DNA of 64,000 bases from Geosiphon pyriformis uo1 (taxonomy: Eukaryota > Fungi > Glomeromycota): contig JAAOMT010000436.1 in the NCBI GenBank assembly GCA_016748015.1, positions 176,703 through 240,702 on the forward strand. The letters are read 5' to 3'. Of the stretch, positions 1 through 47,439 are shown in pieces (positions within the stretch are counted from its first letter, which is position 1; the number at the start of each line of letters is the position of its first letter). The notes below the pieces were generated by a model. That model saw only the letters and a program-made list of their open reading frames with translations, had not been told where the DNA came from and made no database searches. The translations under genes and the position numbers were made by a program.

Positions 1-2635
1 TTGTGTGAAGTTAAGAGACAAGAAAGTGTATGTGGATACAGATTAGACTCTCGTTTTGTTGCCAACACTGGTCGTGCTGAATTTCGGGCTGGTTTGACTT
101 CTTTTCTTGCAGTTGGTGCTTTCGTTGATGATACAATTTAGATTGGTAGCAGCCAGGCTGCCACCCAACATATTCTCAATGTTGCTAGTGATTTCTTTCA
201 AGTCAATGACATCTCAATTAATAATGACAAGACAGTGGCCATTTCCATTAATTGCAAAGTTTCCAATTCTTATTTGTTGATCAGTGGTTTGCTTATTTTG
301 ATAGCCAAAAGGGGAGAGTCTCATCGATATCTGGGTATCTTTCTGTCTATTGAAGGTTTGTCTAAGCCTAGCTTGGCTAAGGCACACTTGGATGTCCAGT
401 TTTTCATCAACATTGTTCTAAGAAAAGCTATCTCTGATAAGCAGTTCTCATATTTGGTCTCAGCAGTTCTTCACCCCATTATTGCCTACAGGACTCAGTT
501 TAGTTTTGTTTCTATTAGTGTGTGTGCAAAATGGGACACTATGATTTGTAAAGTTTTGAAGTCCAAATCTGGCCTGCCATTCGACTTTCCCAATGATGCT
601 GTTTATCATCCTTCTTTGTACAGGTTGAAATCTTTTGAACAGGTCCAGGCAGAAAGCAAGTCAGCTGCTATTGTTTGCTTCACTAATTCTGTGGGTATCT
701 TGGGCTGCTTGTTCGCACATAGGTCTCATGACTTACAAGTTCTCAGCTGGCGCCCTCGCCACTTCCTGCTTTTCCCTTTTCGTATTAGTGTCAGTCCTTT
801 GAATAATTTTTTGGCTGGTGTTGTCTGAATTTTTTTGGGTTGCGACCTTTCTCTGGGTGGTCTCATGACCAAAGCTTTTCGTTTTCAAAAAGAAATTCCA
901 ATGTCTATTGTTCTTGGCAAGCCAGCTTTTTATAAATGTGTCTCTTCACTTCGGCGATATGGAATTGCCTTCGTTGAGCAGTTTCGCAATCGAACTGGTT
1001 CTGCTTTCGAATGGAGGACTTTCAAACGGTGGAAGAGACTGGACCCTCGGGGCCCGGTTCCTGATTGGTTCAATGTTGCTGTTCACTTTTTGTCTGGTTT
1101 CAGGTCTTTTCCCGTTCGCTCCCTTTCACTACTGAATGTTGCCTCGTCTGACATCCTCAAGTCTTGTGAGTTTGATGTTGTCTGCAATCATTTGTTGGAG
1201 GTTGATTCTGATTGCCTTTCTTTGTTTACGGATGGTTCTCTGTGTGGGCTGGGTACTCTTGGTATGAAGGCTGGCGCCACTGCTTTTTTTGGGGACATTG
1301 ATTTGGGTTTAGATGTGGAAGTTTCTGGTTTGGTTTCTTCTACCATGGTGGAGTTACAGGCCATTGCTTTGGCTCTCAAGTGTGTTCCTCCTTCTCGTTC
1401 GGTCAATCTGTTTTCAAACAGCCAGGCTGCATTGGATGCTTGCAAGTCAGAGTTAATGTTGGGTCGTCCAGATTTCAGAAATCGGTGTTGGGTCAAACAC
1501 CGCCATATTTCTAATATCATTTGTCGCAAGAATTTGGATGTTAATTGGATTAAAGTTAGAGGTCACTCAGGGGTCTTGGGCAATGAGCATGCTGACACTT
1601 TGGCTAGGGCTGCTGTGTCTTTTGGTGTGCATCTTCTTTACAGGATTGATGAACATTTTCTCAGGGCTGGTGGTGCTATGGTTTCTGGTAATTCTAGACA
1701 TTTTGTTTGTGGTGTTTTCTGCTCTATTCACCATGCATATTGGGAGGTTGGTTCTGGTTCTCGGGTTTTGGTGAACAGCCTGCATGCTGATGTTGATTGG
1801 TCCAGATCATGTTCAGTGTGACATCCAGACTTTCATTTGGCCGCTGGTTTCACTAGTACTTGTACTGCTAGTTCTCGGACATATTTTATGAAGGCGTTGC
1901 ATTATTGTTTTTCTGTTGCTGTGCATAAGTGACTGTACAGTAAGGGGTACTCCAGTGTGATGTGTTTGTTCTGCGGTAATGTTGAGATTTCAGATCATGT
2001 TTTTTCTTGCCCTTTTGATGCTGGCGATCGTGCTCAGTTAATAAACGCTCATGCATCTGTTTGGAAAACATGCTCGGGTTTGTCTTGCTCAACTTTACGT
2101 GTTTTGCAGTCACTTTCTGATTGTGCTTTCAATGCTGTTGTTAGTACAGCTATAAGTAAGGGCTTTGTTTTCAATGAGTGGTATCGTGAATCTCTTTCTG
2201 TTTTCAAGGACTCTAAAACAGCGGCTCAAAATATTGTGGCTTTTGTTCGCGAATTCTGTCTTGTATTCTGTGATGATATTTGGCTGGTGCATGTAAAACA
2301 CAGAGCTGTTATGGAGAAAGGTGGCTTGATCCCATGTGATGGCTCTATTTCTATCTCGGTTTCTGGTCTTCTTTCGATGCTCTCGTCCGGTGTGGTTAGA
2401 TTGTTGGATATTACTAATGCACTTGGTGTTAGTTTTGGGTTTCGTAAATCTAGTTTATTCTTTTCAGGTGTAGATAATTTGGTCTCGGTGCATATAGGTG
2501 CCTAGTGTTGTCCTGACTAGTCTGAATGACTGGTCATGTGTAGAAAAAGCATGATTCATGCCTAGTTTAGATCACTTGTATAATGTATTGTACTAGGTAG
2601 TGTTTGGATCTCACTTGTTAAAAAAAAAAAAAAAA
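1..2635 (+). mobile_element. 3' part of a non-LTR (LINE) retrotransposon: RT C-terminus, RNase H, CCHC zinc motif, 3' UTR and poly(A); ORF2 disabled
   Basis: One frame runs from 1 to 2505. It has RT motif AFVDD (FVDD at 121-132), thumb-like YLGIFLS, RNase H motifs FTDGS/ELQA/VRGH/GNEHAD and C-x2-C-x7-H-x3-C (CLFCGNVEISDHVFSC). In-frame stops lie at 139-141 (TAG), 826-828, 1819-1821 and 1930-1932 (TGA), with no frameshift. A16 tail at 2620-2635. The 5' end is outside the window. Confidence 0.93.
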
Positions 2636-3830
2636 TAATTACATACTTAAAAAACCAATTTATTAATTTTAAAGATAATACAACCAAAGAAAAAATTTAT
2701 TAATTTAAATTTAAAAATATTTTTTAAAATAATAACTTTTGATTTAAAAGAAAAAAATTTTAATATTGTTTTTTTTAATCTGTTTAATTTTTAAAATTAA
2801 ATAATTTAATAAATAAATAAATTTGTTTTGTTTTTATAATTGATAATAATTAAATAAAATTTTATAAATTAAAGAATAAAATTAAATATTATAATACAAA
2901 TCTAATAAATGTGTTTTTATTGTTATTATTTAAAACAAACAATTAATTATTGTTTATAACTATAAAAACCAAGTATTATAATTGGTATTAGTATTATAAA
3001 ATTAATAAAAAAGCCAAAAAAATTAGTTTTAATATAACAAAAATATTATTGGAAACATCTGTTTTGGTTTTTTTATTATTTAAATAACTAAAACAAAGTT
3101 TGCAAAAAAAATATAAATTTAGTTATTAACTTATAATTAAAAACTTTAAAACTTTTTAAAATAATAATAATTATATTAAAATTATTTTTAATGTATTATT
3201 TTAATGAAACTTATAAAAAAACTCATATTTAAAACCAAAAAAAATGGTTTAAACCAATAAAAAACTGATTTATTACAATATTATTTAAAAACCACTTTAT
3301 AAAATATTATTAAGCAGTTTCTACAGTTATAAATATATTTTTAATAAAGATATTATCAGTAATTTTAGGTATTATAGTGTTTGCAACTTTTTTAATTCTT
3401 TGTTTTAAATATAATCATAAAATAAAAAATAATTAAAAATATAGTTTTATATTAAAAAATTAAATATATATAAAAAGAGTATAATTTATTTTATAATAAT
3501 ACTTAAGTGTTATAAAGCATTAAAAAAAATTTATTTATTTTTTAAAAAAATTCTACTTTTTGAACAAAATATAATTTTTTAATTTTTTTATTATAAATAA
3601 ATTTAAATTAACAATAATTTTTAGTTATTATTAAAAATACATTAATATTTAAAAGTTTATTATTTGAATAAATTTTAAAACTTTAAAATACAATATATTA
3701 ATTTTTTATATACATTATTTATAAATTATGATTATTTTTTTAACAATAATTCCCAAAATTCAAAGAAAATATATATTAATAAATTACATTAAAAATAACA
3801 TTAAAAAAAAATTAAAAATATAAAAAACCG
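2636..3830. repeat. AT-rich island, probable degenerate transposon relic
   Basis: Roughly 85-90% AT by eye with no ORFs. Segment ~2915-3420 shares collinear blocks with ~34320-34750 and ~50570-50880. Confidence 0.65.
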
Positions 3831-4070
3831 CCAGATTTTTCTTTTAATAGTATTTTTCATATCAATTATTATCAAGATGAATATAAAGAAAAAGTTCTTG
3901 GTAAAAACGTGCGAAAAATGACGGTAAGATCGAGTGTTTTTATCAAGCTGAAGTTCTAAAGAATATTTTAAATGATAAAATTAATTTCAGAATAAAATTA
4001 TCTTCCAATCCATGATAAAGCTACAATTTATCTCGCTATTTAGCCTCGTAATAAAACTTGGGTAACCATT

Positions 4071-16893: not shown

Positions 16894-17884
16894 TCAGAGC
16901 CCACTAGAATTACCACCATTTTCAATATTAGCCTTCCGTCTTTGCATATATTTAATAAATCTCGTTGGGATTAGTCGACCCCACATCCGCGTCACAATCA
17001 TTTTAAAATATGCTTGACGCCCAAAGATAGTACCAACTCCGTATAATATGATGGAGTATAGCGGAAGAGTTATACTTAGATAAGCAAAGCGGTAGGACCA
17101 TGGGCCTTCAAATAACGTACCTGTATTTGTTGATGAAGGGTAAATCGGTTATTTTCCTATATAACGATACATTTTCTATTGTAGAACGAATTGGTTTCCT
17201 GATTCGCATTATGGACAATGGTCCACACGTTCATAATCTTTCTAAAACGAGCTAATCTGCTGCATACGTGTCTTGATGCAGTATTTACTAATAGCTTGAA
17301 AAAATTCGGGGCCTTTATTCAGATATTCACAAACCTTGTATCCCTAGTACATGAGTCAATATGGGTTTAACGAGACGAACTGTTGTAGACCCTGTGATTC
17401 CAAATACCACAAAAATTATTGTCCACTCTTTCCACCATAACCAACTCCACCGTTTTAGTTCTGATTCATTGGCCATGAGCCGTGGAGGAGTACCGTTCTG
17501 AGAAGTGGAAGAGGAATAGCTACGTGACGTTTCACTGACAGACAAGAGCGGGGCGTTTATAGTGTTTGAATTTGCACCGGGTTTTTTGAATGGCTCAGCT
17601 AACCCTTCTTTTGCGTCAAGTGACATAGTATGGTTGAATTTATTGACGTATATGGTATTGAAAAGTCGACAAAGTCTTGTTTTTGCGGTTGGTGATAAAG
17701 TAAAAAACCGATATTTGAATTGTTTGTGTAGGGTTGCAGTACTAGTGCCAAACATAGAGTGGTTAAGGTTATTGCTCAAGGAAGAGTTTAACCTGCATTG
17801 AACTCTCATGGGTTTTTTCGCAAAAACTTTAGTTGTTTGGGAAATAACAAAGAATGGGGAACGTAATATCGACATAACAGACAT
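16894..17884 (-). CDS. Membrane protein with DUF6787-like C-terminal domain and probable mitochondrial presequence (2 exons)
   Basis: Exon 1 ends ..WWKEWTIIFVVFGITGSTTVRLVKPILTHVLGIQG. Intron 17334-17121 (GT-AG). Exon 2 is TLFEGPWSYRFAYLSITLPLYSIILYGVGTIFGRQAYFKMIVTRMWGR..SSGL* with stop at 16894. N-terminus is R/K/S-rich and acid-free. Domain name is from recalled motif similarity. Confidence 0.7.
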
Positions 17885-18457
17885 TATAGATCTTGAAGAA
17901 TTTTTCGCCGATTTATAAAAATTTGATTCTACTGAGGCGATGATAGGTGTTGATTCATTTTCGGAGCAACATGAATCAGTTATATCTCAGTAGTGCCATA
18001 TTTGAAGAGTGCACATGCCATTCCTTTTTTTAGATTCCATTTTTAAAACCTACCGAGACCACGCCGCATTGTCATGATAGGCCTTAAGAACCGTGCACCT
18101 AAGCAATGGTGTATAAGTTAAAAGAATGGAAGTAGATTCTCTTAATTTGTTTAACTTAAAATCATATTTGGAGATCGGTATCTCACTTGGAGAAACGATT
18201 ATCTTTTCAATCATTGAAACCGAGTTCAAAGGAATAAAGCATATAAAAATTCCGATGAACTCCTGATGATCCATGTATCTACTATGAAGATAAGCAGATT
18301 AAGACCGTGAAGAGGAACTGGAAGTAACTCTCCTAAATGATCACTAATAGAAGGCCAAATGAGTGATGGAAAACGACAATTCCATTGCCAACAAGATCAA
18401 GTAATCGATACTAAATAACCGAAAATGATCCGAATAACAGGCCCGAGATACAACGTA

Positions 18458-19271
18458 TTAAGAATTGAAAGACTGTTGTGATGTGGCCTGTTGCTGCTGT
18501 GGCTGTTTTCGCAAACTCGATAACCTTTTCTTTTCCCCTTCAAGCTAAACGATGATATGAAGAAAATTAATTTTTGCGGTGTCACACAAGGAATTAGTTC
18601 GATTTGGTTTTATCAATAAAAAAACGAGTTCGTGAGAATATTTGTAGAGACCAGGAAGAACTTTGAGCTTCATAATTTGAGATATATTCGAATAAAGCAT
18701 TAGAGATAACCCATATAAACACATTTGTATAACTTACCACTTTCTTAACGCGTGCAAGAGATCCAGAGGAATTGGAATTCGCTTTACAGTTTTCAAGATC
18801 ATATGGCGGATTGATTAAAACCTCATCAAGAACCACAATCGTATTCTTATGCCAACGCACTGGCAGCCTAAAGTTAATAAAATCATCCAAAAGAATCAAA
18901 AATTTTTGAACCTTCAACGATAGAAAAATATTTAGATTGATTAATTTGAAAGTTATATTGTCTTACGTCTTGCTCAGCGCGTCAAAAATCTCCTGGGCTT
19001 CCGAAGTCACTCCTACCCCAATTCTTGCCAGCGAGGCTTGAGTCTCTTTGAGAGCTTGGGTTTCTCTGGCCTGAATCCTGTCCATTTGCACGTAGCTGAC
19101 CGGGGGATTAATTGTAGCGAAGACACTGGTAGTAGGATTATTTACTATCACTTGTCCATTGACTGGTGTTGTGCTAGTATTATTATTGTTATTGTTATTG
19201 TTATTATTATTAATATTATTAATATTATGATTATTATGATTATTATTAGTACTAGTACTAGTACTAGTAGC

Positions 19272-19318
<47 letters not shown>

Positions 19319-19693
19319 AATTGCTACCGATACTACTTGAACTATCCACGGAGGGTTTTCGACTCGGCAAATGAGTCACCTCTTTGAGAAAACTAATTTT
19401 TAAGATACGAAAATCATGTTTTGGAGAGCTGCCAGAGGTACTATACGTGGTGGTAGAAGTACATTGTGCTAGATCAATCAATCGATTATAGAATTAAGGA
19501 AATTGACCATTGTAATAATTGAGTATGCTTAAAAAATCAAGCGATTAAAAGGATATGAAGCACAACGCAGTTTGTCTTAGTGTCATAAGCATAAATTTGT
19601 CCCTCGTACTCTTCATCCGTCAATGTTTTTACCCTAATAGTGAGCCCAAGAGCCCACTCTAAACCCTTTTGCTGTTGTTGCTGTTGCTGTTGC

Positions 19694-19754
<61 letters not shown>

Positions 19755-20013
19755 GCTGTTGCTGACTGTGCTGTTGTTGCTGCTGCTGCTGCTGACTGTG
19801 CTGTTGCTGCTGATGCTGGTGAGTTTGATGGTGTTGTTGTTGTTGTTGAGATTGTAACTCCCCACGATTATCAGTGGAAGAGGAGGCAGAAGAATTATTA
19901 GTATTTGCGTTCACAAGAGTATTATTGTTACTATTGCCTGTTGATCGTTGGTTGGAGTTGTCAGAAGTGGCGTTATTGGAACGATTCGAGGTGTGCGATT
20001 TTGAGCGTTGCAT
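18458..20013 (-). CDS. LSM12: Lsm12-like protein (Lsm domain plus anticodon-binding AD domain) with polyQ/polyT/polyN tracts, 4 exons
   Basis: WALGLTIRVKTLTDEEYEGQIYAYD (Lsm); IGVGVTSEAQEIFDALSKT|LPVRWHKNTIVVLDEVLINPPY..LARVKKV|LEGEKKRL (AD domain). First intron is AT-AC. Stop at 18458. Confidence 0.9.
19466..19556 (-). other. U12-type (minor spliceosome) AT-AC intron, 91 nt
   Basis: 5' site /ATATCCTTTT, branch-like TTTCCTTAAT (19502-19493), 3' end CTAGCAC/. Splicing restores the frame as CVVL-Q-CTST. No in-frame GT donor nearby. Confidence 0.88.
19668..19848 (-). repeat. Coding (CAA/CAG)n microsatellite, polyQ of LSM12
   Basis: Long TTG/CTG runs on the + strand, about 30 consecutive Gln. 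Further (AGT)n and (ATT)n runs at ~19180-19318. Confidence 0.95.
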
Positions 20014-20729
20014 GTGGCTACAGTGTCCAACTCACAAGGATTTTTTTTGTTTTCAAGAAGCGAAAAACGCAGTTTGACAGGCGCTGAAAAGAAGGCTGTA
20101 TTGGGGAACGAGAGATAAAGAAATACAAACAGAACCACACTAAGGCGAAGTGATAAAACAAGTTTCAGGCAGCCAGACAAGTGGATCGGTTTACAAGGAT
20201 TTCCACAGCTCCTTGTAATAAAAGAATTTCAAACAACCAGCCAAGTTCAACCAACTTCCCCTTGCTCCCCGGCTTCGACGAAACAATAATGGTCGTACAG
20301 ATGTGACGTATCAACACGAAGTCTAAGTTTGGTTATTCACGTGGTATGACAAATATCACATATTATCTGATTGGGTTGTCACTAAATAATTTAAATTTTG
20401 TTAGCTTCCCAAAATAAAATCGACTATAAAAAACGGCCAATTTTTCGATTTAAATTTAGACAGAAACTCATGTTTTATTGCAAACTCATCTCTTTTAGGC
20501 TCCAAAAATTGGCATCATTAGCTTTTGTATATAGCAATAATCAAGTTTTTTAGGTAAGCTAATAATAAGAAATCGTTTAAAATTCACTACCTATTATTGT
20601 TCTGACACCCGGAGTTACATTAGATCAATCTGAAATGCAATGATGACTCTTCAGTCTTTGATGATATTACATTTATTCTCGTGATCTAATAACAGCAAAC
20701 GGCAAGAGTCAAAATAAATCGTAGTCAAT

Positions 20730-21325
20730 TATTAGGATCCCAAAACTTCACATTAGCCTGGTATCATCCAACGACCATTAGGAGAAACAGCAACCGGATT
20801 CGTTATAATATGACATCGTCCTGGAGACTACCGGGAAACCAGGGTTTTACCATCGGGGAAAATATAACAGAGTAAACACGGTCCTTATGACCTTCCCAAA
20901 GACGAAAAAGCTTATCAAGTGACCCAGCAGCAACGAACTGACCATCAGACGGAATGCAACCCTGGTGAACAAACATCCTTTAAACTTGATTGTTATTTGA
21001 TATTCAATTTGAAAATCATTTCACCCGAAATAATATAGAGAAATCTAATGAATAAACATCTTGATCCAGATTTATACACTTGTGTAATAAATCACCTATT
21101 GGTGATTGACCAGGTTTATTTGGGGGCGCGGGTAGGAAACCATTATGATACAAAGAGCCTGGAAAGGTTTTTGGGAGTCCATAGATTGATTAGATGGTAG
21201 ATCTTCATTACACGGCTGTTTAGGAGTTGTGTCGAGGAACTACTATTCATATAAGGTGATTGAATGGAACTACTACCACCTTGTGGACCATTTTGTAGTG
21301 GGCCACTTGGACTCATAGAATACAT
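20730..21325 (-). pseudogene. TUP1: Degenerate TUP1-like WD40 corepressor pseudogene
   Basis: Collinear fragments QDVYSLDFS / [44 protein letters not shown] / VAVSPNGRWMI / VKFWDP match Tup1 WD repeats. At least 3 frameshifts, stops and large internal deletions. Confidence 0.8.
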
Positions 21326-23152
21326 TCATCAAATTCTCAAGGTTCTTTGTCTTTTAAAGGATCTCAGTGGTTGGTATACATTAAAACAATTTGACTCAAA
21401 GCCAAAATTTAATAATGTTTCAAATGATAATGTTTGGAAAAAGGTTGTTCACAGTAAGAGTCCTACGTACCGTATTCTATTGAATTTTAAATGAGCAAAA
21501 AAAAAAGTGAAATAAAATGAAGCAAGAAATAGTCAATTAAAACAACACGAACAAACTTTTAATAACATCAATTTATACCTTCCATCCTTGATTGCTAAAT
21601 TTTTAAAGAGTAATTATTGGACACGCAATCAAATCCACGTAATTACGAGTCAATTTTTAGTAGTGATTGTGATTTCACTCAAAGAAGAAAGTTTTTTAAC
21701 CTGTTCAATATCAAAAGCTATTGCTTTGTTGGTGAATTTTGCCACTTTCTATTTTTACATATGTGAACATGTATAGTTTACGAAATATTTCCATTCGAAA
21801 AAAACAAGATTTGATGCCTACCTCCTTAACTGAAATATAAATTTTCACTATTAGGAAAATTAACGGCTCGACAGAGCACGGAAATTCTCTAATTCACAAT
21901 ATGAAGTTTTGAGGTTTATTTTTCAAAAAGCGAACAGAATTGATCTCAAATGGATATCAACTTCTGAATATGCCTAAAGTAAAAAACCTCCAAAGATATG
22001 CTATACTTTTTTCAATCTAGACTTCTGCTTAACGAAGAATTTACCTGATTTTATAAGACAGTAAAAAATGATTTGTGTTTATAAATTTACAAAAAATCTA
22101 TTCTTTTGTAGGATATTTTTAATTTTGGTAAATAGTTATGATTTTTTTGACATTTTGAATTATTTCTTGATTATTTGAACAACAACTTATTTATTCAATT
22201 GTGAAAAATTGCATCAAAAGCATCAAATTCATAAATGAACTTTTTTATTGATATTCAATTTCTTACTCTTTGAACTTTTATATGCAAAAATAATTCCTGA
22301 AATTCATCCATGAAAAATTTTCAAAAATTTTTTCGATGATAAGGAAAAAAGAAATAGCACATTAAATTTTAATCTTTATACAATTTCTCAAAGTGTTGGT
22401 GATAATAATAAAGTTTTGGAAACTTAATTTGGCGAGTCTTAAATTCATGCTGCTTGAAGCATATTGACTAACTGATAATATAACTTAATACAATATATAT
22501 ACCTAAAAATAATATAAATAGCACCCAAAAAACCCATTTCTTTTGTTGTTTATTATTCCATTCAATTGATAGTAAATTGATGTTCACTATATTTTATTAT
22601 TTACTATAGTTTCATTAGGTGGCAGGCACAATAAAACCAGATTGACATGCTGAATATATACTCAACTTGGCGCGTCAAAATTACGCATCCTTTAACCGAA
22701 AGGAGGAAAGCAGTACAGAAGCTTATCTTTTATTAGGTCATTATGTGAATATATTCCCTTTAGTCTAGCTGAAAATAATTGATCAAGTCCAACACAACTA
22801 ATTTAAGACGAAAAGTGATATGCTTAATTCGTTAATTTTTTAGAAGCAAAAATACGAATTCAAAAATTTTATTTGCATTTAAATTGAGATTTGCCCATAA
22901 GAACCAAAATTTAATAAAGGAAAAAATAAATAATAACCGATTTGTTGTTAGGAAGAGGGTAATCTTCGTCCAATCAACAAGACTGCTAACTTTCTTACTT
23001 CTATTGAGTGGGATGAAACTTCCATCCAGCTCATATAATGTATATAACCAGTCAACAGAAACATAGGAAAGATTTCGAAAGGTGAACCCAATCGTTTGCT
23101 CATAATAACCAAAAATTCTATTCTATCATTCATTTTCAACTAGGCTATTTGC

Positions 23153-29397: not shown

Positions 29398-30079
29398 ATT
29401 TAAAAAAAATTGATGAAATGGGTGAAAGTCAAGGATCGCTGAGCATAAAAAAGATTATTCACATTTTATGTGGATAAAAAGCCTATTTAATCTATTTTGG
29501 GTTTACTTTATTGATGATTTCCGATTGGCAAATTTTCTATCAAATTCGTTTCACGTTCCACAATTGATTAGAACAAGAAATACATAAATAAAATGGTTAA
29601 AGAAAATATCCTATGTCAAATTTTGTTGAGGAAATTGATGTATATTTTGGGAAGATCCTTCAAAATTCTGTTCCGCAGTGCCTACAGATTTCTTTAGAAC
29701 AATAGGACGATCTTTATATAAAGACATAGCCCAATTGATAATCATCTATCAAATTGAAAAAAGAATGCTTAATTGTTACCCAAATATTTTAATAAATGTT
29801 CACAAAAGCAATGAATCCAAGGATTTTTTCTTCAAGATTATTATTATTAGATGGTAACAGGAAATGACACATGGTACGTGTGACCAGTAACCTTATAAAT
29901 TTTGTTATAGACAAACTCTCTCAAAGTTTGCCACATTGTACAAGGCACACCAGAAAATATCTCCCAATTCATGTGACTCAGAACAATATCGCAAGCTCTA
30001 ATCTGCAATTTAAATTTTTTATTTGTAATTGTTTTAAAATAAATTATGAATATACATTTTTTAATTTTGATTTTTGAAA

Positions 30080-30222
30080 AAAAAAAACATTATTTTAATA
30101 TTATTTTGTTTTACAAAATAAAATAATAATAATAAGTAGCTAATTATACACAATTCATATTTAATATATAATAATTACATTATACAAAAATAATTAGTAG
30201 TTGAACTACACTTTTAATACAA

Positions 30223-30268
<46 letters not shown>

Positions 30269-30572
30269 TAATTAAAAATTTTAACCAAATAAAAAAGCAG
30301 TTAAAAACTGTAAATTATAATAAATAATATAAAACAAGTAAAAAAAAAATATTTTAATTATATAAATATATATTTTTAAATATATTATTTATAATATATG
30401 TATAATTTAATTTTTATTATTATTATTTTTTGTAAAAGTATAGTTTAATTACCAATTATTTTATATAATTAATTATTGTACATTAAATATAAATTATGTA
30501 CAAATTATGTATAATCAGTTACTTAATATTTAAATATAATAAAAATAATATAATAATAAATGTTGTTTTTAA
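30080..30572. mobile_element. MITE/foldback-like element with long degenerate inverted arms
   Basis: The reverse complement of ~30134-30230 (..AAAAGTGTAGTTCAACTACTAATTATTTTTGTATAATGTAATTATTATATATTAAATATGAATTGTGTATAATTAGCTACTTA) aligns with ~30423-30525 (..AAAAGTATAGTTTAATTACCAATTATTTTATATAATTAATTATTGTACATTAAATATAAATTATGTA..TAATCAGTTACTTA). (AAT)n lies inside. No target-site duplication identified. Confidence 0.65.
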
Positions 30573-30600
30573 ATTTTAATTGATAACAATAAAAAATTAA

Positions 30601-30635
<35 letters not shown>

Positions 30636-31600
30636 TAATTATTAACTTAAATTTTAATTTAATTATTAATTTAATTATTGACTTGATTATTAACTTAGTT
30701 TTTAATCTAATTATTAATTTTTTAGTTGTAAAAAAAAAGATTAAATAATAAATAATAAATAATAAAAATTAAGATAAAATCAAATTAATAAAAAAGTAAT
30801 TATTTATTAAATTCTATTGTATTTTATTATTTATTTATTTATTTTTTTCTTTCTTTCTTTCTTTTTTTTATTTTTCTTTTCAAATATTTTTATATTTTTC
30901 TTTTTTAATTTGTATTTTTAAAAAACTGTTTGTTTGTTTGTTTGTTTGTTTGTTTGTTTGTTTGTTTTTATAATTAATTAAATAAAGACATTATTGAAAA
31001 ATACAATAATATTTGTTATTAATTCTAAAAATTATAAAAATAAAACATAGAATAATAGCAACAGTATTATTTTGTTAACAATTATAAATTATTTTTCTAT
31101 CTTTAAATTTTCAAAAAAAAAAAATTTAAGCAACTATAATTTTAAGATTAATTACTTATATTAAATTTTTACAAATTTAATTCACTTTTTTAATTGAATT
31201 TTCTTTTTGATTATTTCTATTATTTTTAATAGTTTTTTTTATCTGCTATTCATTAATTTGTTACTCAGATTCGTAATAATATATAATAAATAAAAAATAT
31301 GTTAACAAAAATTTTTTATGCTTATTAAAAATTACATTAAATAATAATAATAATATAAACAAATTGGCAAAATTTATTATAACAAATGATCACAATTTTC
31401 AAAATTAATACTTAATCCAATATTTTTAAGTTAAAAATCAAGCTTTTGTTATTCAAAAATCCTTTTTTTTGCTTTTTTTTATACTAAAAACATAAATAAA
31501 GAGATCAATTAATAATTTTATTGATAGGCATTATTAAGCATTGGCATCTAATAAAAGATCCAATTTTCAATCATAATAAATACGATCATTATTAATCAAG
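30573..31600. repeat. AT-rich island with simple repeats
   Basis: (TTA)n at ~30605-30635, degenerate ~12-bp units like TTAATTATTAAC at ~30632-30720, (TTTG)~10 at 30927-30965. No coding signal. Confidence 0.7.
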
Positions 31601-31702
31601 TTATTAATTCCCTTCATAATCTAGCTTTTATAAAATTTTCGTACCCATTGAAAAATTCACTGATATCATCATTTTCAATTACACAAAACCCCTTAAAACA
31701 AA

Positions 31703-31954
31703 ATGGCAACCACAAATCAAGACTCATCACCAAAATCAAAATCACTAAAACTTTTTCAACACGAAACACAAGGTGAACACCCATGTTATAAAGAAGCATG
31801 TGCAATTCAAACATGCTTTGGAAAAAATAATTTTCAAGAATCGAAATGTGAAGATGTGATCCAAAAATTAGGTGAATGTTGTGAAAAGTTATTAAAGTCT
31901 GGTGGCGTATCTGTTAGTTGTCCCGCTAAATGGAAGCGTCTTGGTGGTAATTGA
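31703..31954 (+). CDS. CMC4: Cx9C-motif mitochondrial intermembrane-space protein (Cmc4/MTCP1 p8 family)
   Basis: PCYKEACAIQTC..NNFQESKCEDVIQKLGECC..SVSCP is the family Cys pattern. Confidence 0.88.
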   Translation: MATTNQDSSPKSKSLKLFQHETQGEHPCYKEACAIQTCFGKNNFQESKCEDVIQKLGECCEKLLKSGGVSVSCPAKWKRLGGN

Positions 31955-32252
31955 GTTGAAATGCTTTAAATAACGGTTTCTGATAAAGACTCGACCATTA
32001 ATTTCTTTATTAATGAGAGGCAATTCGTTTATGGGAGGATTTTTTGAAAGAAAATAAATAGTTTATATGAAATATATCATGTAATAGCTGATGAAATCTG
32101 AAACTAGGATGATGTTATAGTTGGCAAAAGCGTTTTATAGTTTAGAGCTTGTTGGGAACACACTTTGTCGCGTGTTAAAGATCAGCGTATAACTGAAAAG
32201 AGTCATGTGAATTAAAAAATGGATGAAAATCTAGTTTTTCAGTCTTTGAGAA

Positions 32253-33989: not shown

Positions 33990-35220
33990 AATAGGAAAAT
34001 TCTAAATATTATTTTAATGTATAAACATTAAAAATAGTTTTGTAAAATCAATATCATTTTAAATTTAAAAATAACCTTTTACAAGTGAAATAAAATGTTG
34101 TTCAAGTATTAATATGTTAATGGTAAAAAAAATCGTAGAAAAACCAAAATTGGATAGCTAAACCAAAGCTACCTTTTTAAAAAAAAGAAAACTATTTAAA
34201 AGATACAAAACATATTAAAAATTTGGTTATTATTATTGTATTTAATAATAGTAACTGGTTTTTGATTACTTTGTTTTTTCTGGTAATTTGAAAAAATGTC
34301 AATGATAAATTGTTACAAGTTTTATTATCTAAAACAAAAAAAATTATTATTTATAATCAAAATAAAACAAAATATTGTGATTAATGCTAATAATACAAAA
34401 TTAATAAAAATACTAAATTTGTTTTAAAAAAACTTTGTTTTCTAATTTTCTAAAAAAATTAGCTTTTTTTGTTTTTTGGTTGTTTAATTATTTAAACAAT
34501 AATAAAAAAATGTTTAAAAAAACAATAACTTTGATTATTAGTTTATAATTAAAAAAAACAAATGTTTATTTTTTTTTTAACAATTAAAAACTGTTTTGTT
34601 TTTATATTATTATTTAATAACAATAAAAAACACTTTTATAAATAATATTTAATTGTTTTTATTATTAAAAAAAGCTTTAATTACAAAAAAATAAATATTG
34701 TTTTTTTATTTTATTTTTTATTTTTTATTTTAATTATAATTACAAAATTTACAAAAAAGAAAAAAAAAGGGTTTTAATATTATTATAAATATTAAAATAA
34801 AAATTATTTAATATTAATTTATAAAATTAAATTTTTTTTTATTTACTTTAATAAAATATAATATAATTATTATTTATTATAATATAGTTATAATAAACTT
34901 TAAATTAATATATAATTTATGTGATTTTATATATATAATTAATTTATATATTAAATTAAATAAATTTATTTAAAATAATTATTTTTTAATATAATTACAA
35001 TTAATTTATTGTTATTAAAAATACCAAAAAAGCAATAACTTTAATATAAAATTTAACACCAATAAAACAATTTTTAAAAATTTTAAAAACTAATTACAGA
35101 TTTTATTATTTAAATATAATACAACTGCAACTTATAAATAATAAAAATAAACACAATATTTAACGACAAAAAGACTAGATCTTTATTAAATAAAAGAAAC
35201 AATGATTTCCCCCATATTAT
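33990..35220. repeat. AT-rich island, degenerate dispersed repeat
   Basis: Roughly 85-90% AT by eye. ~34320-34750 is collinear with ~2915-3420. Confidence 0.65.
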
Positions 35221-35222
35221 TT

Positions 35223-36807
35223 TCAAGACTTTAATACAGCCAAATTATCTCGATGAATTACACATTCGGAATCGGCATAACCCAAAAGTCTGAATATTTC
35301 CGAACTCTGGGATCCTTTAATTCTACTAATCTCGACTGACGAGTAATTCACCAGCCCTTTTCCTAACTCGACAACTTCCAAACCTCCATCATCTTTTTTC
35401 TTTTCAACTACAACTTTAACCGCTTGATCCGCGACAAAGTTTCCTTCTATTTGCGTAATACCGACCGCGAACAGACTACTCGTTTGTCCAACCTTGGTAA
35501 TGGCCCGATAGGCACCCTCATCAATAAAAATGGTACCCGCAGTATGCAGACCATGCAGAATCCACCATTTACGATCCACTAATGGATTATTTTTGGCAAG
35601 GAAACGCGTATGCAATGGGAGAGCGGGATTCAGAGATGTTGTGATACTCGGATTATTGGAAAGATGCGCAATGATCGAGATAATATTTTTAGGATTTGAA
35701 CCACGACTAATTATTGTGGTGACTCCGGCCGCGGTGGCCAAGTCAGCTGCGATTAATTTTGTTGTCATTCCACCTGTACCAAGTGCACTGCCCGGTGATG
35801 AAACTATCACTTTTTACGGTATTAAAATTTAAATATTACGAGAGAGGAAAGTCTTGCCAACAGTGAAAGATGGGGATAGAAATAAAAAGAACCTTTCTGT
35901 TTTAAACCACCAACATCATCAACAATCTCAACAGGTGATGCGTTAGGATTGGTTCGTGGATTATCAGTGTACAAACAATCGACGTCGGTCATTAAGAATA
36001 AATAATCCGCGTTAACCATACCTGCTGTTATGGCCGATAAAGTATCATTGTCTCCAAATCGAATTTCCTAAACGTAAGAACGATGAGAAGAGGTATTTTA
36101 TTGATAAAAAATATGATTCAGAAAATGACTTCAATCAAAAATACCTACGCGAACAGAAATCGTGTCATTCTCGTTAACGATTGGAACCACTCCGATTGCC
36201 AATAACTCGGTGAAGGTGTTAACAGCATTCAAATATTGCGTCCTCTATTTTATCCAAGGCAAAAAATATTAATTTCAAAGAGGTAATGGAAACACGTATA
36301 GAAACTGATTCTCGATTTTTCTCGTTTACATCGGCTATATCATTACGCGTCAAGAGTATTTGAGCAATGGGTTGATTAAGTTGAGTAAATAGATCATCGT
36401 ACATTCGCATTAATCTTCCTTGTCCAACAGCGGCCACTGCCTTAAAGAATAAAAATTATTAATTCGTTCAAAGAATCAAAAATCATGACGAGAATATTAT
36501 CACATTAATCCACTTTTTACCAACTTATTGACCAAGTTAAACAAACAAAAAATCATACCTGAATAGCTGCCAACTTTTTTGGCTTCTTTTCCATGTTCAA
36601 ACGCCGTAGCCCAACTCCAATAGCACCGCTAGTTACTAGAATCACTCTGTGGCCCAAAGTACGTAGTTTCACGATAGTTTCAACCAGCAGGGAAAGGTTC
36701 GACAATAGAGGCAGGTGTGTCTCTTCCTCACATATTGAAGAAGTGCCTAGTTTTATCACGATTGTAAGAATGGAGTTCTTGCCGGTACGAGGATTTTTTG
36801 AAGTCAT
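35223..36807 (-). CDS. PRO1: Glutamate 5-kinase with PUA domain, multi-exon
   Basis: [54 protein letters not shown] and C-terminal PUA ([24 protein letters not shown]). ATG at 36807. Confidence 0.96.
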
Positions 36808-38505
36808 TTTTAGTAAAAAGGTGGACTTGTAACTTTTTTTCAACAACAATTTTGATCTGTTTAAATATTCAGATCAGCATTGTAAAATAATATGTATATA
36901 TTCTGGATCTGACAATTATTATTATTAAAAAAATGGAATGTAAGGAGAAAAGACTTTTTTTAAAAAAATAACTTCAAAATGATGTTAAATTTCTGGAAAG
37001 AGCTCAATTATGAAGTTTTTGAGTTTCAGTTTCTGAAATCATTAATTTTCTTAATTCGAAGATTACATGGAGGCCTTTTTTGAAGAAGAAGAAGAAGAAG
37101 AAGCAGGAAAACTTTACTACTACCCTTATGAGAATATGGACTTATTGACATATGAGACTCAACTGTGGATGCCTTACTTCTTATCTCGAAAGCAATGATA
37201 GATTAATTGAATAAAGCCCTACACAAGTTTCTAAATCTATTTCCATGAAAACCTAATGGACGCAAGAAAAAAAAATCCAACGAAAAATAGTCACAATAAA
37301 CATTAAAAGCCAGGGGATACCAACAGTATTTAAAATGAAAATCACTTTATAACTGAACGCTACGTACTGTGAACTAGCAGAAACCCTTCCCCGATTGTTT
37401 CGCAAGGACTCATGTGATAGATGATCGTCAACCAAGCGCCTCAGGAAGTCAATCTAATGCGAGTCCCCAAACTTATTGCGAAACAGTCAGTTCAAAAATA
37501 TTCATTTTAACCTTTGAAAAGAAAGGATCTTTTAATTAAATTTCAAAGAAGAATCGGATTTAAGGAAAGATTAAATTTGAATTTTTTGAATACTTTAATG
37601 GAAAAACCTATTCAAAAAAATCTAGGACAAGGTATTTAAATTATGACTTAAATATATGATTGGGAAGTTATACAATTTGGGCTCTGGATAAAAAAGAAAT
37701 TTGATTTTTTTTAATTATTTATTTGAATTAACTTTAGTTTAAACCTTAAAGAAATTTAAAGATAAAAAATTATCTTGAACTATAAAAAAATGACTTCCAA
37801 CTCAATATTGGATCTCCTTATTAATCGGAAATTCATAAAAGTTCTCATGGTGAATAAAAAAATCATAAAAAATGGTGCCCACAATTATTAATTATTTGAG
37901 AAGCAAAAAAAAAACCGATCAAAATTTCACATAACTTTTTAGTAAATTCATTTCACTAAGTCATGTCAAATGGTTTTTTATTTTTAAGTTGAATATTTTA
38001 AAATTATTTTAAAAATGAAAATATAGAACTTTTTTTTTAGTCAAAATTTATTTTCAAGGTCGCTTTAAATCCCATTATTAAAAAGATTCATTAATCAATT
38101 TTGAGAAAAAGACGATAAGGATTATAATTTGCGAAAAAGAATAATAACATTAATAATAAATCTCAAAAACGGGTATTGTTAAAAGATAAATTTTGTATTT
38201 GAAAAACTTGAGAACCAAATTTTTTCTCATTAAATAAAAACTTTATTTATTTATTTATTTATTTACTTACTTATAAACAGAAATCTCTTGAAAAAAATAA
38301 AAAAGGTCGAATGGAAAAGAAAAAAATACTGAAAAAAAAATGAAAGCATTACTTCTATTATCTACATAAGTTAAATAAATAATCAAGCTTTTTATTTAAT
38401 ATTAAATATTATTTTATATTTATATTTATTGATTTTTTATTTAAGATTAAATATTATTTTATATTTTTATTTGATAATTACAAATTTATTATAATACATA
38501 CAAAT

Positions 38506-38536
<31 letters not shown>

Positions 38537-38590
38537 TATTTATTAATTATAAATATAAATGATTTATTTAATCATAATTAATATATATAT

Positions 38591-38851
38591 ATATATACAG
38601 TATATATTATTATTAATAAAATCTTTGTCACATGAACTTTTATTTTCTGTATACAGTATATAGAATATCTTTTCATATATATAAAACACTTTTCTATATA
38701 TAGGAAAACCTTTTAAAACTGGTTCATGTGACAAAATAAATTTTCTACAAGATTGAGTTTTTGAATAGATCATGTTTATCGAAAGGTTGTTTATTATTTG
38801 TTATAAATCTAATATAATACTTTTGGTCGGAGATATATATACTGTATATAT
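38591..38851. repeat. Nested inverted repeats upstream of URM1
   Basis: 17-bp IR 38591-38607/38835-38851, 14-bp perfect IR TTTGTCACATGAAC 38624-38637/38722-38735, 9-bp IR 38657-38665/38692-38700. Confidence 0.7.
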
Positions 38852-38988
38852 TATATATATATATTTTTACATGGATTTATTTATGCTGTTCCATTTTGTT
38901 TTTTGTTTTTTTTTAAGGTTCAATTGTCACGACTGATTAAAAATTTTATTTTTCAAAGTTTTCCCTTATATACTTTAATAGTTAGATA

Positions 38989-39654
38989 ATGTCTGAACTT
39001 ACCGTGAAGCTATCATTCAGGTATATTTATCTTTTGATTTTTCAATGCGCTATTTTCTAACTGACCTTTTCCTTCAATTATTTTATTTTGATCTCATGAA
39101 ATTCGGGATCATGAAAATTTTATATGGGGTATGGGGTATACGATTTTAAAATATTTATAATGAACAAGTGGGGGAATGGAATTATTATTTAATAATATAA
39201 AAGAAATCACCGTAAATGTGCCAAAATCGATTAACGGCATATCTCCCCCAACCATGAAAGAATTGGTAAATCTTAATTTTTGATTAAAGGATCATTTAGA
39301 TCCTATTGATTGAAATTTTTTGTTTTTGTTTTTGTTTTCGTATTCTTTTTCTTTTTCTTATTTTCTAATCTTTTGCTTTTTCTTCCAATAAAAAATTCAA
39401 GATTTTATGGGTTCGCGATACTTTGTTAAAAGAACGTGCGGAATTGTTTGTTAGCGGCTCTACAGTGTCAGTAATTTTTATTTTGATATTTTTTTAAATT
39501 AACAAATTTTCTTACTTATCTCTGTTATTCATGAAGACGTCCCGGAATTCTTGTGCTTATCAACGATACCGACTGGGAATTGGAAGGGGAATTAAAGTAT
39601 GAGATTAAAAATGGTGATGATATTGTCTTTATTTCGACCCTGCATGGAGGTTAA
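38989..39654 (+). CDS. URM1: Ubiquitin-related modifier 1, 4 exons (not in ORF track)
   Basis: [11 protein letters not shown]|[18 protein letters not shown]|[22 protein letters not shown]|[38 protein letters not shown]. Confidence 0.96.
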
Positions 39655-40187
39655 GCGATGAGTTGCCAAATAGTGTTGAAGCGAAGAAGGGATTTATGAG
39701 AAATGTTATTCTGATTGGAAAATTGTTATGTTCTATTTCATATAACTCGAAATGTGTATTATCAAAGTGTTCAATTAAAGGAATCTGGACATGATTAAAT
39801 TTCATTTTTCTGAAACGAGATTGACCATTTTCAATCAAACCATATTGTGATATCTTGAAATTTGAGATATCAAAACGAATATTTCAGCCCCTTCGGATGT
39901 CATTGGAATAATGCCCATTCACAGGATCCCAACTGATATACTGTCAATTATTTTTGATTAAAGATCTATAAAAAGAAAATTTCTTAATTCAAAATAAAAG
40001 CTCATCTGTCAAATTCTAATTTAAAAAAATTATATTTTCGGATGATTAGTTCACAAGTTCATCAGATATCTTCAAAGATTTAGTTTTTATAGAATTTTTA
40101 TCATTAAAAATAACTTGGGAGAAACCTTATCCTAAATTTCCTTTTGTACATGCTAGGTGATTTTTTATAGAATCCGAATTTGCTTCT

Positions 40188-46140: not shown

Positions 46141-46486
46141 TGAAGAAAAAGTGATACAGATTAAAGGACATTACAATCCCGTGAAGATTTCGCGTGGTTA
46201 TTAAAAATTATGGAGGAACAAGACATAACTTTCCCTTCTGTCATTGGACGAAAATACCGCGAATTGTTTCGGGCTCGATCGAACCCCAAAAATGGGAATC
46301 TTACAAAGGGTAAAAAACATAGACGTAGTGACTATTTAAAAGAAAGCTACCAATAAGCAAAGCGGATGTGAAAGCTAAAAAATCCCCGATCATCGATCGA
46401 CATGTAGAATGCTAAAAGAGGATAAATGATAAGAGTGATCCTCTTCGTTGATCTAGTTAAGTCTTTACATCAACAATTTGGTAACA

Positions 46487-47145
46487 ATGTCTGAAACTGA
46501 AGGGTAAGTAAAAAGAAATCTTTACAAGTTTACCTTTATCCTTCTCCCTTGCTCGCTCTGAGTCGATTTTTCTGCACAATCACGTTCATTTGTTGATAAT
46601 TTCACCGACTCCTACCGCTTTTTTGACAAAAATGTAGAGAACAACAAACGTTAGTCCTTAAGACTGGTAAGAAATTATTGACTAAATTTTGTCGTTTAAT
46701 TATTTCAAAGCCCATATAATCATCTCGTTTTTTCCCTTTCAATCCGATAAAAGTCGGCTTTGATGCCCGTTTTCCAAATACCAACCAAACGAAACATTGC
46801 TGGCAAAACTATATCGATTATTACAAATGTATTAATGCGCGTGGTGAAGACTTTCCCCCGTGCAAGCAATTTTTTTCAGCCTTTCACAGTTTGTGCCCGA
46901 ACGATTATGTAAGTAAAGAGTTTGATGAAAGGAAAATCGTGATGGTTTTGGTAATTTACGATCTGAACTTGGATCTTGAGGCCAAGCATGGGAAATTGAC
47001 CTTTTGATGGTAGCAATGGAAGAAAATTCTAAAATTTTGGACATATTTAAAAATATCAATTATTTTTAACGTTTTCTATCAATCATAGATCGAAAAATGG
47101 GATAATCAACGTGAAATGGGTACTTTCCCGGTGAAATTGACCTAA
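46487..47145 (+). CDS. COX12: Cytochrome c oxidase subunit VIb, 4 exons (not in ORF track)
   Basis: MSETEG|EQQTLVLKT|VGFDARFPNTNQTKHCWQNYIDYYKCINARGEDFPPCKQFFSAFHSLCPNDY|IEKWDNQREMGTFPVKLT*. Confidence 0.96.
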
Positions 47146-47439
47146 AAGTTGGGTACCAAGATTATGAGTTTTTTACATGACCTACCCAGAAGTATGGTTA
47201 CCAGAGGAAATGTCGATATAATTGTGATTTTATTGCGCCGACGTATACAAAAATATTTCCAATTTTATCTATCTTAGCTGTTTGCTAAAGGTCTTCATAA
47301 TTTTTAGGTTTTAGATGCCTTAAACGATTGTTAGTTGTCATCAAAAGGATCTGAGAAATCTAAAATTGTGAATGAAATTTTTGGGGTTAATTTAATAAGA
47401 GTTCATTGTAAGCCTTTTATTATGTGAGAATTAATTTCT

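What the first reader, a model, noticed from the sequence alone, without database searches (positions are those of the whole stretch)
19466..19556. U12-type AT-AC minor-spliceosome intron in LSM12
Seen: the Lsm domain is broken by 91 nt that start ATATCCTTTT, contain TTTCCTTAAT about 28 nt from the end and finish CAC. Removal gives in-frame CVVLQCTS, and no GT donor gives the right phase. An AT-AG variant 3 nt upstream is also in frame, so a one-residue isoform is possible. Established: RTATCCTT plus TCCTTAAC-like branch points define U12 introns, and the minor spliceosome is lost in Dikarya but kept in some early-diverging fungi. Inference: this genome has a working minor spliceosome, and GT-AG-only annotation would mis-model this gene.
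Basis: partly seen in the sequence, partly recalled or inferred. Interest (0 to 1): 0.8.

Follow-up and report, generated by a model that had tools for sequence, protein, structure and literature searches.

The report
Minor-spliceosome AT-AC intron in fungal LSM12
The 91-base interruption of this fungus's LSM12 gene is a genuine intron of the rare "minor" (U12) type, kept at the same spot in twelve early-diverging fungi; it is a correct but ordinary finding, because both this gene and this fungal group were already known to use minor splicing.

Summary
Observation confirmed. On the minus strand, 19556..19466 is a 91-nt phase-1 interruption of an LSM12 gene. It starts ATATCCTTTT, carries TTTCCTTAAT with its branch A 28 nt from the end, and ends CAC.

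- **RNA-level support:** a 317-nt contig of the only public run holding this locus skips exactly 91 nt here and fits AT-AC, not the 88-nt AT-AG variant. The genome has only the intron-containing copy.
- **Machinery:** the genome encodes U11, U12, U6atac and a sub-threshold U4atac. It also has U11/U12-59K (PDCD7) and SNRNP25-type domains.
- **Conservation:** an AT-AC intron sits at the same codon and phase in 11 other early-diverging fungi. Ten start ATATCCTT; Linnemannia starts ATATCA. The intron is absent in Pneumocystis.
- **Annotation:** public gene models of these orthologues often get it wrong (read-through, wrong junction, split gene).

Interpretation supported, novelty low. LSM12 has been listed as a U12-intron gene in animals since 2007-2010. 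Minor splicing in Glomeromycota, with 205 introns and all four snRNAs in Rhizophagus, was published in 2023.

The organism is a Glomeromycotina fungus; assembly size and contig count fit Geosiphon pyriformis. This scan noted five other U12 introns elsewhere in this genome, but not this one.

Not tested: whether the animal LSM12 U12 intron is at the same codon.

The parts
19557..20013 (-). LSM12 exon 1: start codon, a run of about 60 Q-rich residues, and the first half of the LSM12 LSM domain (ends ...TNCVVL plus 1 nt)
   Evidence: Translation. Pfam LSM12_LSM positions 5-36 of 60, 26.9 bits. 84-92% identical to Glomeromycotina LSM12 over residues 116-152.
19466..19556 (-). U12-type AT-AC intron, 91 nt, phase 1
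   Evidence: Sequence. Skipped in the X1 contig. Same position in 11 other fungi.
19547..19556 (-). 5' splice site ATATCCTTTT, matching the U12-type consensus /RTATCCTT
   Evidence: Identical in 10 of the 11 orthologous introns.
19493..19502 (-). Branch-point sequence TTTCCTTAAT (consensus TCCTTRAY). The presumed branch A is at 19494, 28 nt from the intron end.
   Evidence: A TCCTTRAY-like motif is kept in every orthologous intron.
19466..19468 (-). 3' splice site ...CAC. An alternative in-frame AG sits at 19469-19470.
   Evidence: The 91-nt skip fits AC, not the 88-nt AG variant.
18966..19465 (-). LSM12 exon 2: rest of the LSM domain (KHDFRILKISFLKEV), poly-T/N/S tracts, and the start of the AD domain
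   Evidence: Pfam AD PF09793 positions 2-44, 39.1 bits. Alignment to orthologues.
18868..18965 (-). Intron 2, ordinary GT-AG (GTAAGA...TTTAG)
   Evidence: Sequence. Exon 3 reads on in frame and is 72-81% identical to orthologues.
18738..18867 (-). LSM12 exon 3 (LPVRWHKNTIVVLDEVLINPPYDLENCK...)
18545..18737 (-). Intron 3, ordinary GT-AG (GTAAGT...TTTAG)
18458..18544 (-). LSM12 exon 4 with stop codon (LEGEKKRL...)
   Evidence: LEGE[KR][KR]RL is conserved in the orthologues.

Best explanation
The 91 nt at 19556..19466 (minus strand) are a U12-type AT-AC intron in phase 1. It splits the Sm-like (LSM) domain of the LSM12 orthologue of a Glomeromycotina fungus.

**Mechanism**
- *Inferred from the established mechanism:* U11 snRNA pairs with the 5' splice site ATATCCTTTT, and U12 snRNA pairs with TTCCTTAAT and bulges the branch adenosine. 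[quoted passage not shown]
- *Shown here:* the motifs; a spliced-form contig with a 91-nt skip; the four snRNA genes (U4atac below its Rfam cut-off) and two minor-specific protein domains in the same genome; and conservation of the intron and its signals across early-diverging fungi.
- *Not shown:* that removal depends on the minor spliceosome.

The intron is most likely ancestral in fungi. It is probably the counterpart of the LSM12 U12 intron known in animals, but that positional identity was not tested.
For: 1. **Motifs and frame.** ATATCCTTTT, then TTTCCTTAAT, then CAC. Removal restores CVVLQC[T/P]S, which matches correctly modelled orthologues: P0001, P0004, P0007, P0011, P0012 and P0034 all read NCVVLQ....
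2. **Spliced form in a public run.**
   - The X1 contig is 317 nt at depth 249.5. It is 100% identical on 130 nt and 110 nt either side and skips 91 nt.
   - The tool places the cut at 19464->19556 with 2 nt of slack, which includes 19466-19556. No contig of that run covers the intron.
   - The run holds only 0.49 of the words of the surrounding 4 kb. That fits exons only.
   - The genome has a single copy of this stretch, and it contains the intron.
3. **Machinery in the same genome.**
   - U11 80.9 bits, U6atac 70.9 and U12 55.1 are above their Rfam cut-offs; U4atac scores 43.7 (E 1.8e-4), below its cut-off.
   - The pairing segments are conserved: U11 5'-UAAAAGGG, U12 GAGUAAGGA and U6atac GAAAGGAGAGA.
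   - PDCD7/59K scores 35.6 bits and SNRNP25-type Ubiquitin_4 scores 44.3 bits, both above the Pfam cut-offs.
4. **Conservation.**
   - Eleven other species have an AT-AC intron at the same codon and phase. They are Ambispora, Paraglomus, Diversispora, three Rhizophagus/Glomus species, Funneliformis, Linnemannia, Phycomyces, Rhizopus and Basidiobolus.
   - Ten of them start ATATCCTT, and all carry a TCCTTRAY-like box. Intron lengths (70-328 nt) and box-to-3'-end spacing differ widely.
   - Pneumocystis, from a phylum without minor splicing, has no intron there.
5. **Literature.**
   - LSM12 is a U12-intron gene in human, mouse, zebrafish and Drosophila (PMC1874599, PMC2831892, bioRxiv 10.1101/2022.10.12.511939, PMC12084885).
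   - Rhizophagus irregularis has 205 minor introns and all four minor snRNAs (PMC10639083).
Against: - The run's type is uncertain. The tool labels it 'RNA? (probably DNA)', and its longest record is 64.7 kb. The contig is therefore strong but not formal proof of an RNA junction.
- Contigs cannot show retention levels or rare isoforms.
- The branch box lies 28 nt from the 3' splice site. From my own knowledge, that is further than the roughly 10-20 nt typical of animal and plant U12 introns.
- U4atac is below Rfam's gathering score.
- The U6atac candidate has G where the consensus has the A of the AGC triad.
- The motif pair alone is not statistically rare.
- Duplex energies against the snRNAs do not stand out from shuffles.
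Confidence: 0.93

Rival explanations
1. The 91 nt are an AT-AC intron removed by the major (U2-type) spliceosome.
For: Rare U2-type AT-AC introns exist (own knowledge). The branch box is 28 nt from the 3' end, unusually far for a U12 intron. In Linnemannia the orthologous intron starts ATATCAAACT and lacks the CCTT core.
Against: The 5' splice site matches the U12 consensus at all eight positions and is conserved in 10 of 11 orthologues. A TCCTTRAY box is also conserved. No polypyrimidine tract precedes the 3' end. The genome keeps the minor snRNAs and two minor-specific protein domains.
Confidence: 0.02
2. The 91 nt are not an intron but a DNA difference. On this view run X1 is DNA from a strain, nucleus or retrocopy that lacks them, and the assembled allele is a disrupted gene.
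For: read laying labels X1 'probably DNA' and its longest record is 64.7 kb.
Against: The same interruption with the same signals is present in 11 other species. The assembly holds no intronless copy. At depth about 250 a DNA run of this organism should hold nearly all words of the 4-kb stretch and should cover the intron. X1 holds 0.49 of the words and has zero depth on the intron.
Confidence: 0.02
3. The main product uses the AT-AG acceptor at 19469 (88 nt removed, adding one proline), or a GT-AG/GC-AG pair nearby, as several public annotations of orthologues assume.
For: Both are in frame. Funneliformis, Diversispora eburnea and one R. irregularis model use such junctions.
Against: The X1 contig skips 91 nt, not 88. 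The TAG before CAC is absent from most orthologues listed. The GT-AG options delete conserved LSM-domain residues that RNA-informed models keep.
Confidence: 0.02

Closest known systems
U12-type intron of animal LSM12 (human, mouse and zebrafish LSM12; Drosophila Lsm12a/CG15735, intron 1 of 4)
   Same: It is the same gene family and also a minor-type intron. In the fly it is likewise the first intron, and fly Lsm12a splicing depends on minor-spliceosome factors (PMC2831892 Table 2; PMC12084885; bioRxiv 10.1101/2022.10.12.511939).
   Different: The animal intron has GT-AG termini (PMC2831892), whereas here and in all 11 other fungi it is AT-AC. Identity of codon position and phase with the animal intron was not tested, because no animal gene sequence was obtained.
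Minor introns of Rhizophagus irregularis (205 predicted; Larue & Roy 2023, PMC10639083)
   Same: The subphylum is the same, the 5' splice site and branch-point consensus are the same, phase 1 is favoured, and all four minor snRNAs are present.
   Different: That catalogue depends on annotated introns. Two public R. irregularis LSM12 models mis-handle this intron: P0010 reads into it and P0013 skips the LSM domain. This particular intron may therefore be missing from the catalogue; I did not check. The present genome is a different species and is not R. irregularis.
Canonical U12-type AT-AC introns of animals and plants
   Same: It shares /ATATCCTT, TCCTTAAY with a bulged branch A, no polypyrimidine tract, phase 1, and a position in an old RNA-metabolism gene.
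   Different: The branch A lies 28 nt from the 3' end, and 19-45 nt in other Glomeromycotina and 62 nt in Linnemannia. The classical window is roughly 10-20 nt (own knowledge). Mucorales and Basidiobolus keep 11-19 nt.

Membership tests
U12-type (minor-spliceosome) intron | 5' splice site /RTATCCTT | tested here: met
   ATATCCTTTT at 19556-19547 on the minus strand.
U12-type (minor-spliceosome) intron | Branch-point box TCCTTRAY close to the 3' end, with no polypyrimidine tract | tested here: met
   TTTCCTTAAT at 19502-19493. The downstream stretch TCTATAATCGATTGATTGATCTAGCAC is not pyrimidine-rich. Caveat: the 28-nt spacing is longer than classical.
U12-type (minor-spliceosome) intron | AT-AC (or GT-AG) termini actually used in the transcript | tested here: met
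   The X1 contig skips 91 nt, and among the three equivalent placements only 19466-19556 has recognised termini. Caveats: this is a Logan contig, not raw reads, and the library type is not on record.
U12-type (minor-spliceosome) intron | Genome encodes U11, U12, U4atac and U6atac | tested here: met
   U11 80.9, U6atac 70.9 and U12 55.1 bits are above the gathering scores. U4atac at 43.7 bits (E 1.8e-4) is below its gathering score of 53.
U12-type (minor-spliceosome) intron | Genome encodes minor-spliceosome-specific proteins | tested here: met
   PDCD7/59K PF16021 at 35.6 bits and SNRNP25-type PF18036 at 44.3 bits, both over their cut-offs. zf-SCNM1 was not found, but the model has 27 positions and the result is uninformative. 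The other minor-specific proteins were not searched.
U12-type (minor-spliceosome) intron | Orthologous position holds U12-type introns in other species | tested here: met
   Eleven other fungi have an AT-AC intron at the same codon and phase, ten of them starting ATATCCTT. For animals the support is from literature only, and the position was not compared.
U12-type (minor-spliceosome) intron | Splicing depends on U12/U6atac | not testable with these tools
   This needs snRNA inactivation or in vitro splicing.
LSM12 (LSM12_LSM plus AD domain protein, Ataxin-2 partner) | N-terminal LSM12-type Sm fold followed by an anticodon-binding (AD) domain | tested here: met
   On exon 1 alone, which holds half the domain, PF21166 scores 26.9 bits against a cut-off of 29.5. 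On exon 2, PF09793 scores 39.1 bits against a cut-off of 23.4. Each exon is 64-92% identical to proteins named LSM12 or AD-domain protein in Glomeromycotina. The joined protein was not searched.

The most novel reading that the evidence does not exclude
The LSM12 minor intron is one ancient intron kept at the same codon from the fungal-animal ancestor. It would be AT-AC in fungi and GT-AG in animals.

Glomeromycotina and Mortierellomycotina splice it with branch boxes 19-62 nt from the 3' site, and Linnemannia with a 5' site that has lost the CCTT core. That would point to relaxed or altered 3'-site and 5'-site rules of the minor spliceosome in these fungi, or to an intron caught in U12-to-U2 conversion.
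Probability: 0.25. Interest if true: 0.45.

Novelty: new member of a known kind. Interest (0 to 1): 0.25.

Why it matters
- **Gene models.** The call corrects gene models. The same intron is mis-annotated in public models of Rhizophagus irregularis, Funneliformis, Diversispora and Basidiobolus (read-through, wrong junction, or one gene split in two), and the Paraglomus model is truncated before it. Annotation-based counts of minor introns in early-diverging fungi are therefore probably too low.
- **A marker for comparison.** It adds one well-supported, deeply conserved minor intron in a conserved RNA-metabolism gene (LSM12, Ataxin-2 partner). It can serve as a marker when comparing minor-splicing signals across Mucoromycota and Zoopagomycota.
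- **Limits.** It does not change what is known about where the minor spliceosome survives.

Tried and rejected
- **Motif statistics alone.** RTATCCTT is not enriched in the window (4 found against 7.2 expected). The 5' site plus branch-box pair arises by chance in about a quarter of simulated windows. I did not use this as evidence.
- **Other RTATCCTT sites.** The three other sites (9306+, 24815-, 27818+) have no branch box downstream and are not proposed as introns.
- **Duplex energies.** RNA duplex energies of the intron against this genome's U11, U12 and U6atac ends do not differ from shuffles. The snRNA segments all pair with CCUU-type words, so the test is uninformative.
- **First word search.** A search with the first 44 residues of exon 2 found nothing, because the length filter excludes the roughly 320-aa full protein.
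- **zf-SCNM1.** No match, but the model has only 27 positions and also found nothing in the controls.
- **Supplement of PMC10639083.** It does not mention LSM12.
- **Joined protein.** The spliced (joined) protein was never sent to a search or fold tool. Joining was done only inside a script, to test reading frames.
- **Big profile search.** This left the animal and plant gene structures out of reach.

Full report
**1. What is in the sequence**

The gene lies on the minus strand.
- An ORF starts at ATG 20013 (MQRSKSHT...) and runs through a long glutamine-rich tract.
- It ends with ...KGLEWALGLTIRVKTLTDEEYEGQIYAYDTKTNCVVL plus one base at 19557.
- This tail matches positions 5-36 of Pfam LSM12_LSM.

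- They begin ATATCCTTTT.
- They hold TTTCCTTAAT at 19502-19493.
- They end CTAGCAC.

After them the frame resumes in phase 1.
- It reads Q-CTSTTTYSTSGSSPKHDFRILKISFLKEV..., the second half of the LSM domain.
- Low-complexity tracts follow, then the start of the AD domain (PF09793, 39.1 bits).
- Two ordinary GT-AG introns (18965-18868 and 18737-18545) and two short exons complete the gene. The stop ends at 18458.

I enumerated all GT/GC/AT donors with AG/AC acceptors around the break.
- Only AT-AC 19556/19466 keeps the conserved domain; AT-AG 19556/19469 does too but adds one proline.
- The only in-frame GT-AG pairs start at 19609 and delete conserved residues.
- If the 91 nt are retained, a stop follows after six codons.

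**2. Is it more than chance?**

Not by the motifs alone.
- RTATCCTT occurs 4 times in the window against 7.2 expected.
- A 5'-site motif followed by a branch box appears in about 24% of simulated windows.

The case rests on position, conservation and transcript-like evidence.

**3. Evidence that it is spliced out**

Only one public run holds this locus (X1; 0.49 of the sampled words of 17500-21500). Laid on 19335-19665, it gives a single contig.
- The contig is 317 nt at depth 249.5.
- It is 100% identical on both sides and skips 91 nt.
- The tool puts the cut at 19464->19556 with two bases of slack. The skip can therefore be 19465-19555, 19466-19556 or 19467-19557.
- Only 19466-19556 has recognised termini (AT...AC on the gene strand).
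- An 88-nt AT-AG skip is not what the contig shows.
- Nothing in the run covers the intron.

The tool is unsure of the library type ('RNA? (probably DNA)'). Three points favour RNA.
- A DNA run at this depth should hold nearly all words of the region, not half.
- A DNA run of this organism should cover the intron.
- The assembly contains only one copy of this stretch, and it has the intron. The joined form is therefore not a retrocopy of this genome.

Contigs cannot measure retention or rare isoforms.

**4. Machinery in the same genome (128.3 Mb, 792 contigs)**

Rfam models find single matches for each minor snRNA.

| snRNA | Bits | Gathering score |
|---|---|---|
| U11 | 80.9 | 39 |
| U6atac | 70.9 | 33 |
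| U12 | 55.1 | 53 |
| U4atac | 43.7 | 53 (below cut-off; E 1.8e-4) |

The segments that pair with introns are conserved.
- U11 starts UAAAAGGG. This can pair with UCCUUUU of the 5' site.
- U12 has GAGUAAGGA. This pairs with UCCUUA[A]UUC, bulging one A, with one G-U pair.
- U6atac has GAAAGGAGAGA.

These pairings are read by eye against the established model. A generic duplex-energy test was not discriminating.

Two minor-specific protein domains are present: PDCD7/U11-U12 59K (35.6 bits) and the SNRNP25-type ubiquitin-like domain (44.3 bits).

**5. Relatives**

Word searches with the AD part of exon 2, and then with an alignment of the hits, returned LSM12 proteins of Glomeromycotina, Mortierellomycotina, Mucoromycotina, Zoopagomycota and a few Ascomycota. 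I fetched twelve genomic loci.

Every early-diverging fungus examined has an intron after the codon aligned with ...NC[V/I/L][V/A]L, in phase 1, with AT-AC termini.

| Species | Intron length (nt) | Branch A to 3' end (nt) |
|---|---|---|
| Ambispora gerdemannii | 110 | 35 |
| Paraglomus occultum | 150 | 35 |
| Diversispora epigaea | 90 | 19 |
| Rhizophagus irregularis | 90 | 31 |
| Rhizophagus clarus | 89 | 33 |
| Glomus cerebriforme | 106 | 45 |
| Funneliformis geosporum | 103 | 20 |
| Phycomyces blakesleeanus | 89 | 19 |
| Rhizopus microsporus | 70 | 11 |
| Basidiobolus ranarum | 93 | about 12 |
| Linnemannia elongata | 328 | 62 |

- Ten of the eleven begin ATATCCTT. Linnemannia begins ATATCAAACT.
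- All carry a TCCTTRAY-like box (exact in eight of the eleven; one mismatch in Diversispora, Rhizopus and Basidiobolus), while intron lengths and box-to-3'-end spacing differ widely.
- This is the pattern expected of a functional minor intron.
- In Pneumocystis canis (Ascomycota) the coding sequence is continuous across this point. That agrees with loss of the intron in a lineage without minor splicing.

**6. Annotation consequences**

| Model | What it does |
|---|---|
| G. cerebriforme, R. clarus and JGI models | Read CVVLQ..., the AT-AC junction |
| R. irregularis P0010 | Reads into the intron (CVVL-HILFGSLV...) |
| R. irregularis P0013 | Jumps from KTLNDDD to FLKEV |
| Two Funneliformis models and D. 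eburnea | Use wrong junctions |
| D. epigaea | Locus split into two genes at the intron |
| Paraglomus | Model is truncated |
| Basidiobolus | Translates its in-frame, stop-free 93-nt intron as 31 residues |

**7. Which organism**

- Protein identities are 64-92%, spread over all Glomeromycotina orders.
- The best exon-2 match is Ambispora, order Archaeosporales.
- It is not R. irregularis.
- The assembly figures (128.3 Mb, 792 contigs) fit those published for Geosiphon pyriformis (129 Mb, 795 scaffolds; PMC9453076, Table 1).
- This is an inference, not a proof.

**8. Comparison with what is known**

- LSM12 was listed among human U12-intron genes in 2007 (PMC1874599).
- The fly orthologue CG15735 has a GT-AG U12 intron (intron 1 of 4) that is conserved as U12 in human (PMC2831892, Table 2).
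- It is minor in human, mouse and zebrafish and 'minor-like' in fly (bioRxiv 10.1101/2022.10.12.511939).
- Its retention rises in a fly minor-splicing mutant (PMC12084885).
- Larue and Roy reported 205 minor introns, the four minor snRNAs and minor-spliceosome proteins in R. irregularis, and none in Ascomycota or Basidiomycota (PMC10639083).

Neither 'a working minor spliceosome in this lineage' nor 'a minor intron in LSM12' is therefore new.

- this species;
- the demonstration that the fungal LSM12 intron is AT-AC and positionally conserved across at least four early-diverging groups;
- the list of mis-modelled public genes.

I could not compare the codon position with animals or plants. No such sequence was among the listed hits, and the large profile search was left unused.

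**9. Verdict**

It is a new member of a known kind, and interest is low to moderate.

This scan's notes list five other candidate U12 introns elsewhere in this genome (ZRSR2, MCMBP, a formin, cyclin L, CAB2). I did not test them. None overlaps this locus.

Noticed in passing
window 19670-19850 (minus strand), and 19180-19320: This species' LSM12 carries a glutamine-rich run of about 60 residues (CAA/CAG repeats with a few H and S) before the LSM domain. It also has long poly-T, poly-N and poly-S tracts between the LSM and AD domains. Orthologues have only ESQQQKG at the first place. LSM12 is a partner of the polyQ protein Ataxin-2, which makes this a curiosity.
   Followed up: partly
L002:1501-1640 (G000:C713:129720-129859): The single U6atac candidate reads GUUGGCAAU where the Rfam consensus has GUUAGCAcU. 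That puts a G at the A of the near-invariant AGC triad. The U12 candidate reads UGCCUCAAA where the consensus has UGCCUuAAA.
   Followed up: no
L004:1501-1632 (G000:C513:8149-8280, minus): The U4atac candidate scores 43.7 bits, below the Rfam gathering score of 53. The 5' stem-loop region and the Sm site AAUUUUUGG are conserved.
   Followed up: no
L011:1424-1751 (Linnemannia elongata LSM12): The orthologous intron is 328 nt. It starts ATATCAAACT without the CCTT core, has a perfect ATCCTTAAC box 62 nt before the 3' end, and ends AC. It may be a minor intron with a degenerate 5' site or one in conversion. I did not check whether Mortierellomycotina keep the minor snRNAs.
   Followed up: partly
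L005-L009, L014, L015 versus L010, L012, L013: The branch-box-to-3'-site distance of this intron is 19-45 nt in Glomeromycotina. It is 11-19 nt in Mucorales and Basidiobolus. This suggests lineage-specific slack in 3'-site choice.
   Followed up: partly
L008:1641-2810 (Diversispora epigaea); L010:1250-1342 (Basidiobolus ranarum); L015 (R. irregularis): Public gene models break at this intron. D. epigaea has two genes in place of one. Basidiobolus translates the 93-nt intron as 31 residues. R. irregularis models either read into the intron or skip the LSM domain.
   Followed up: yes
L005, L006, L007, L008, L015 flanks: Gene order around LSM12 is shared among Glomerales and Diversispora. A Metallophos_2 gene lies upstream on the opposite strand, and in Glomerales a large PPR-repeat gene lies downstream. 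I did not compare this with the window.
   Followed up: no
window 2001-4000, 30001-32000, 34001-40000, 46001-52000: Stretches with G+C of 14-23% alternate with genic stretches of 34-43%.
   Followed up: no
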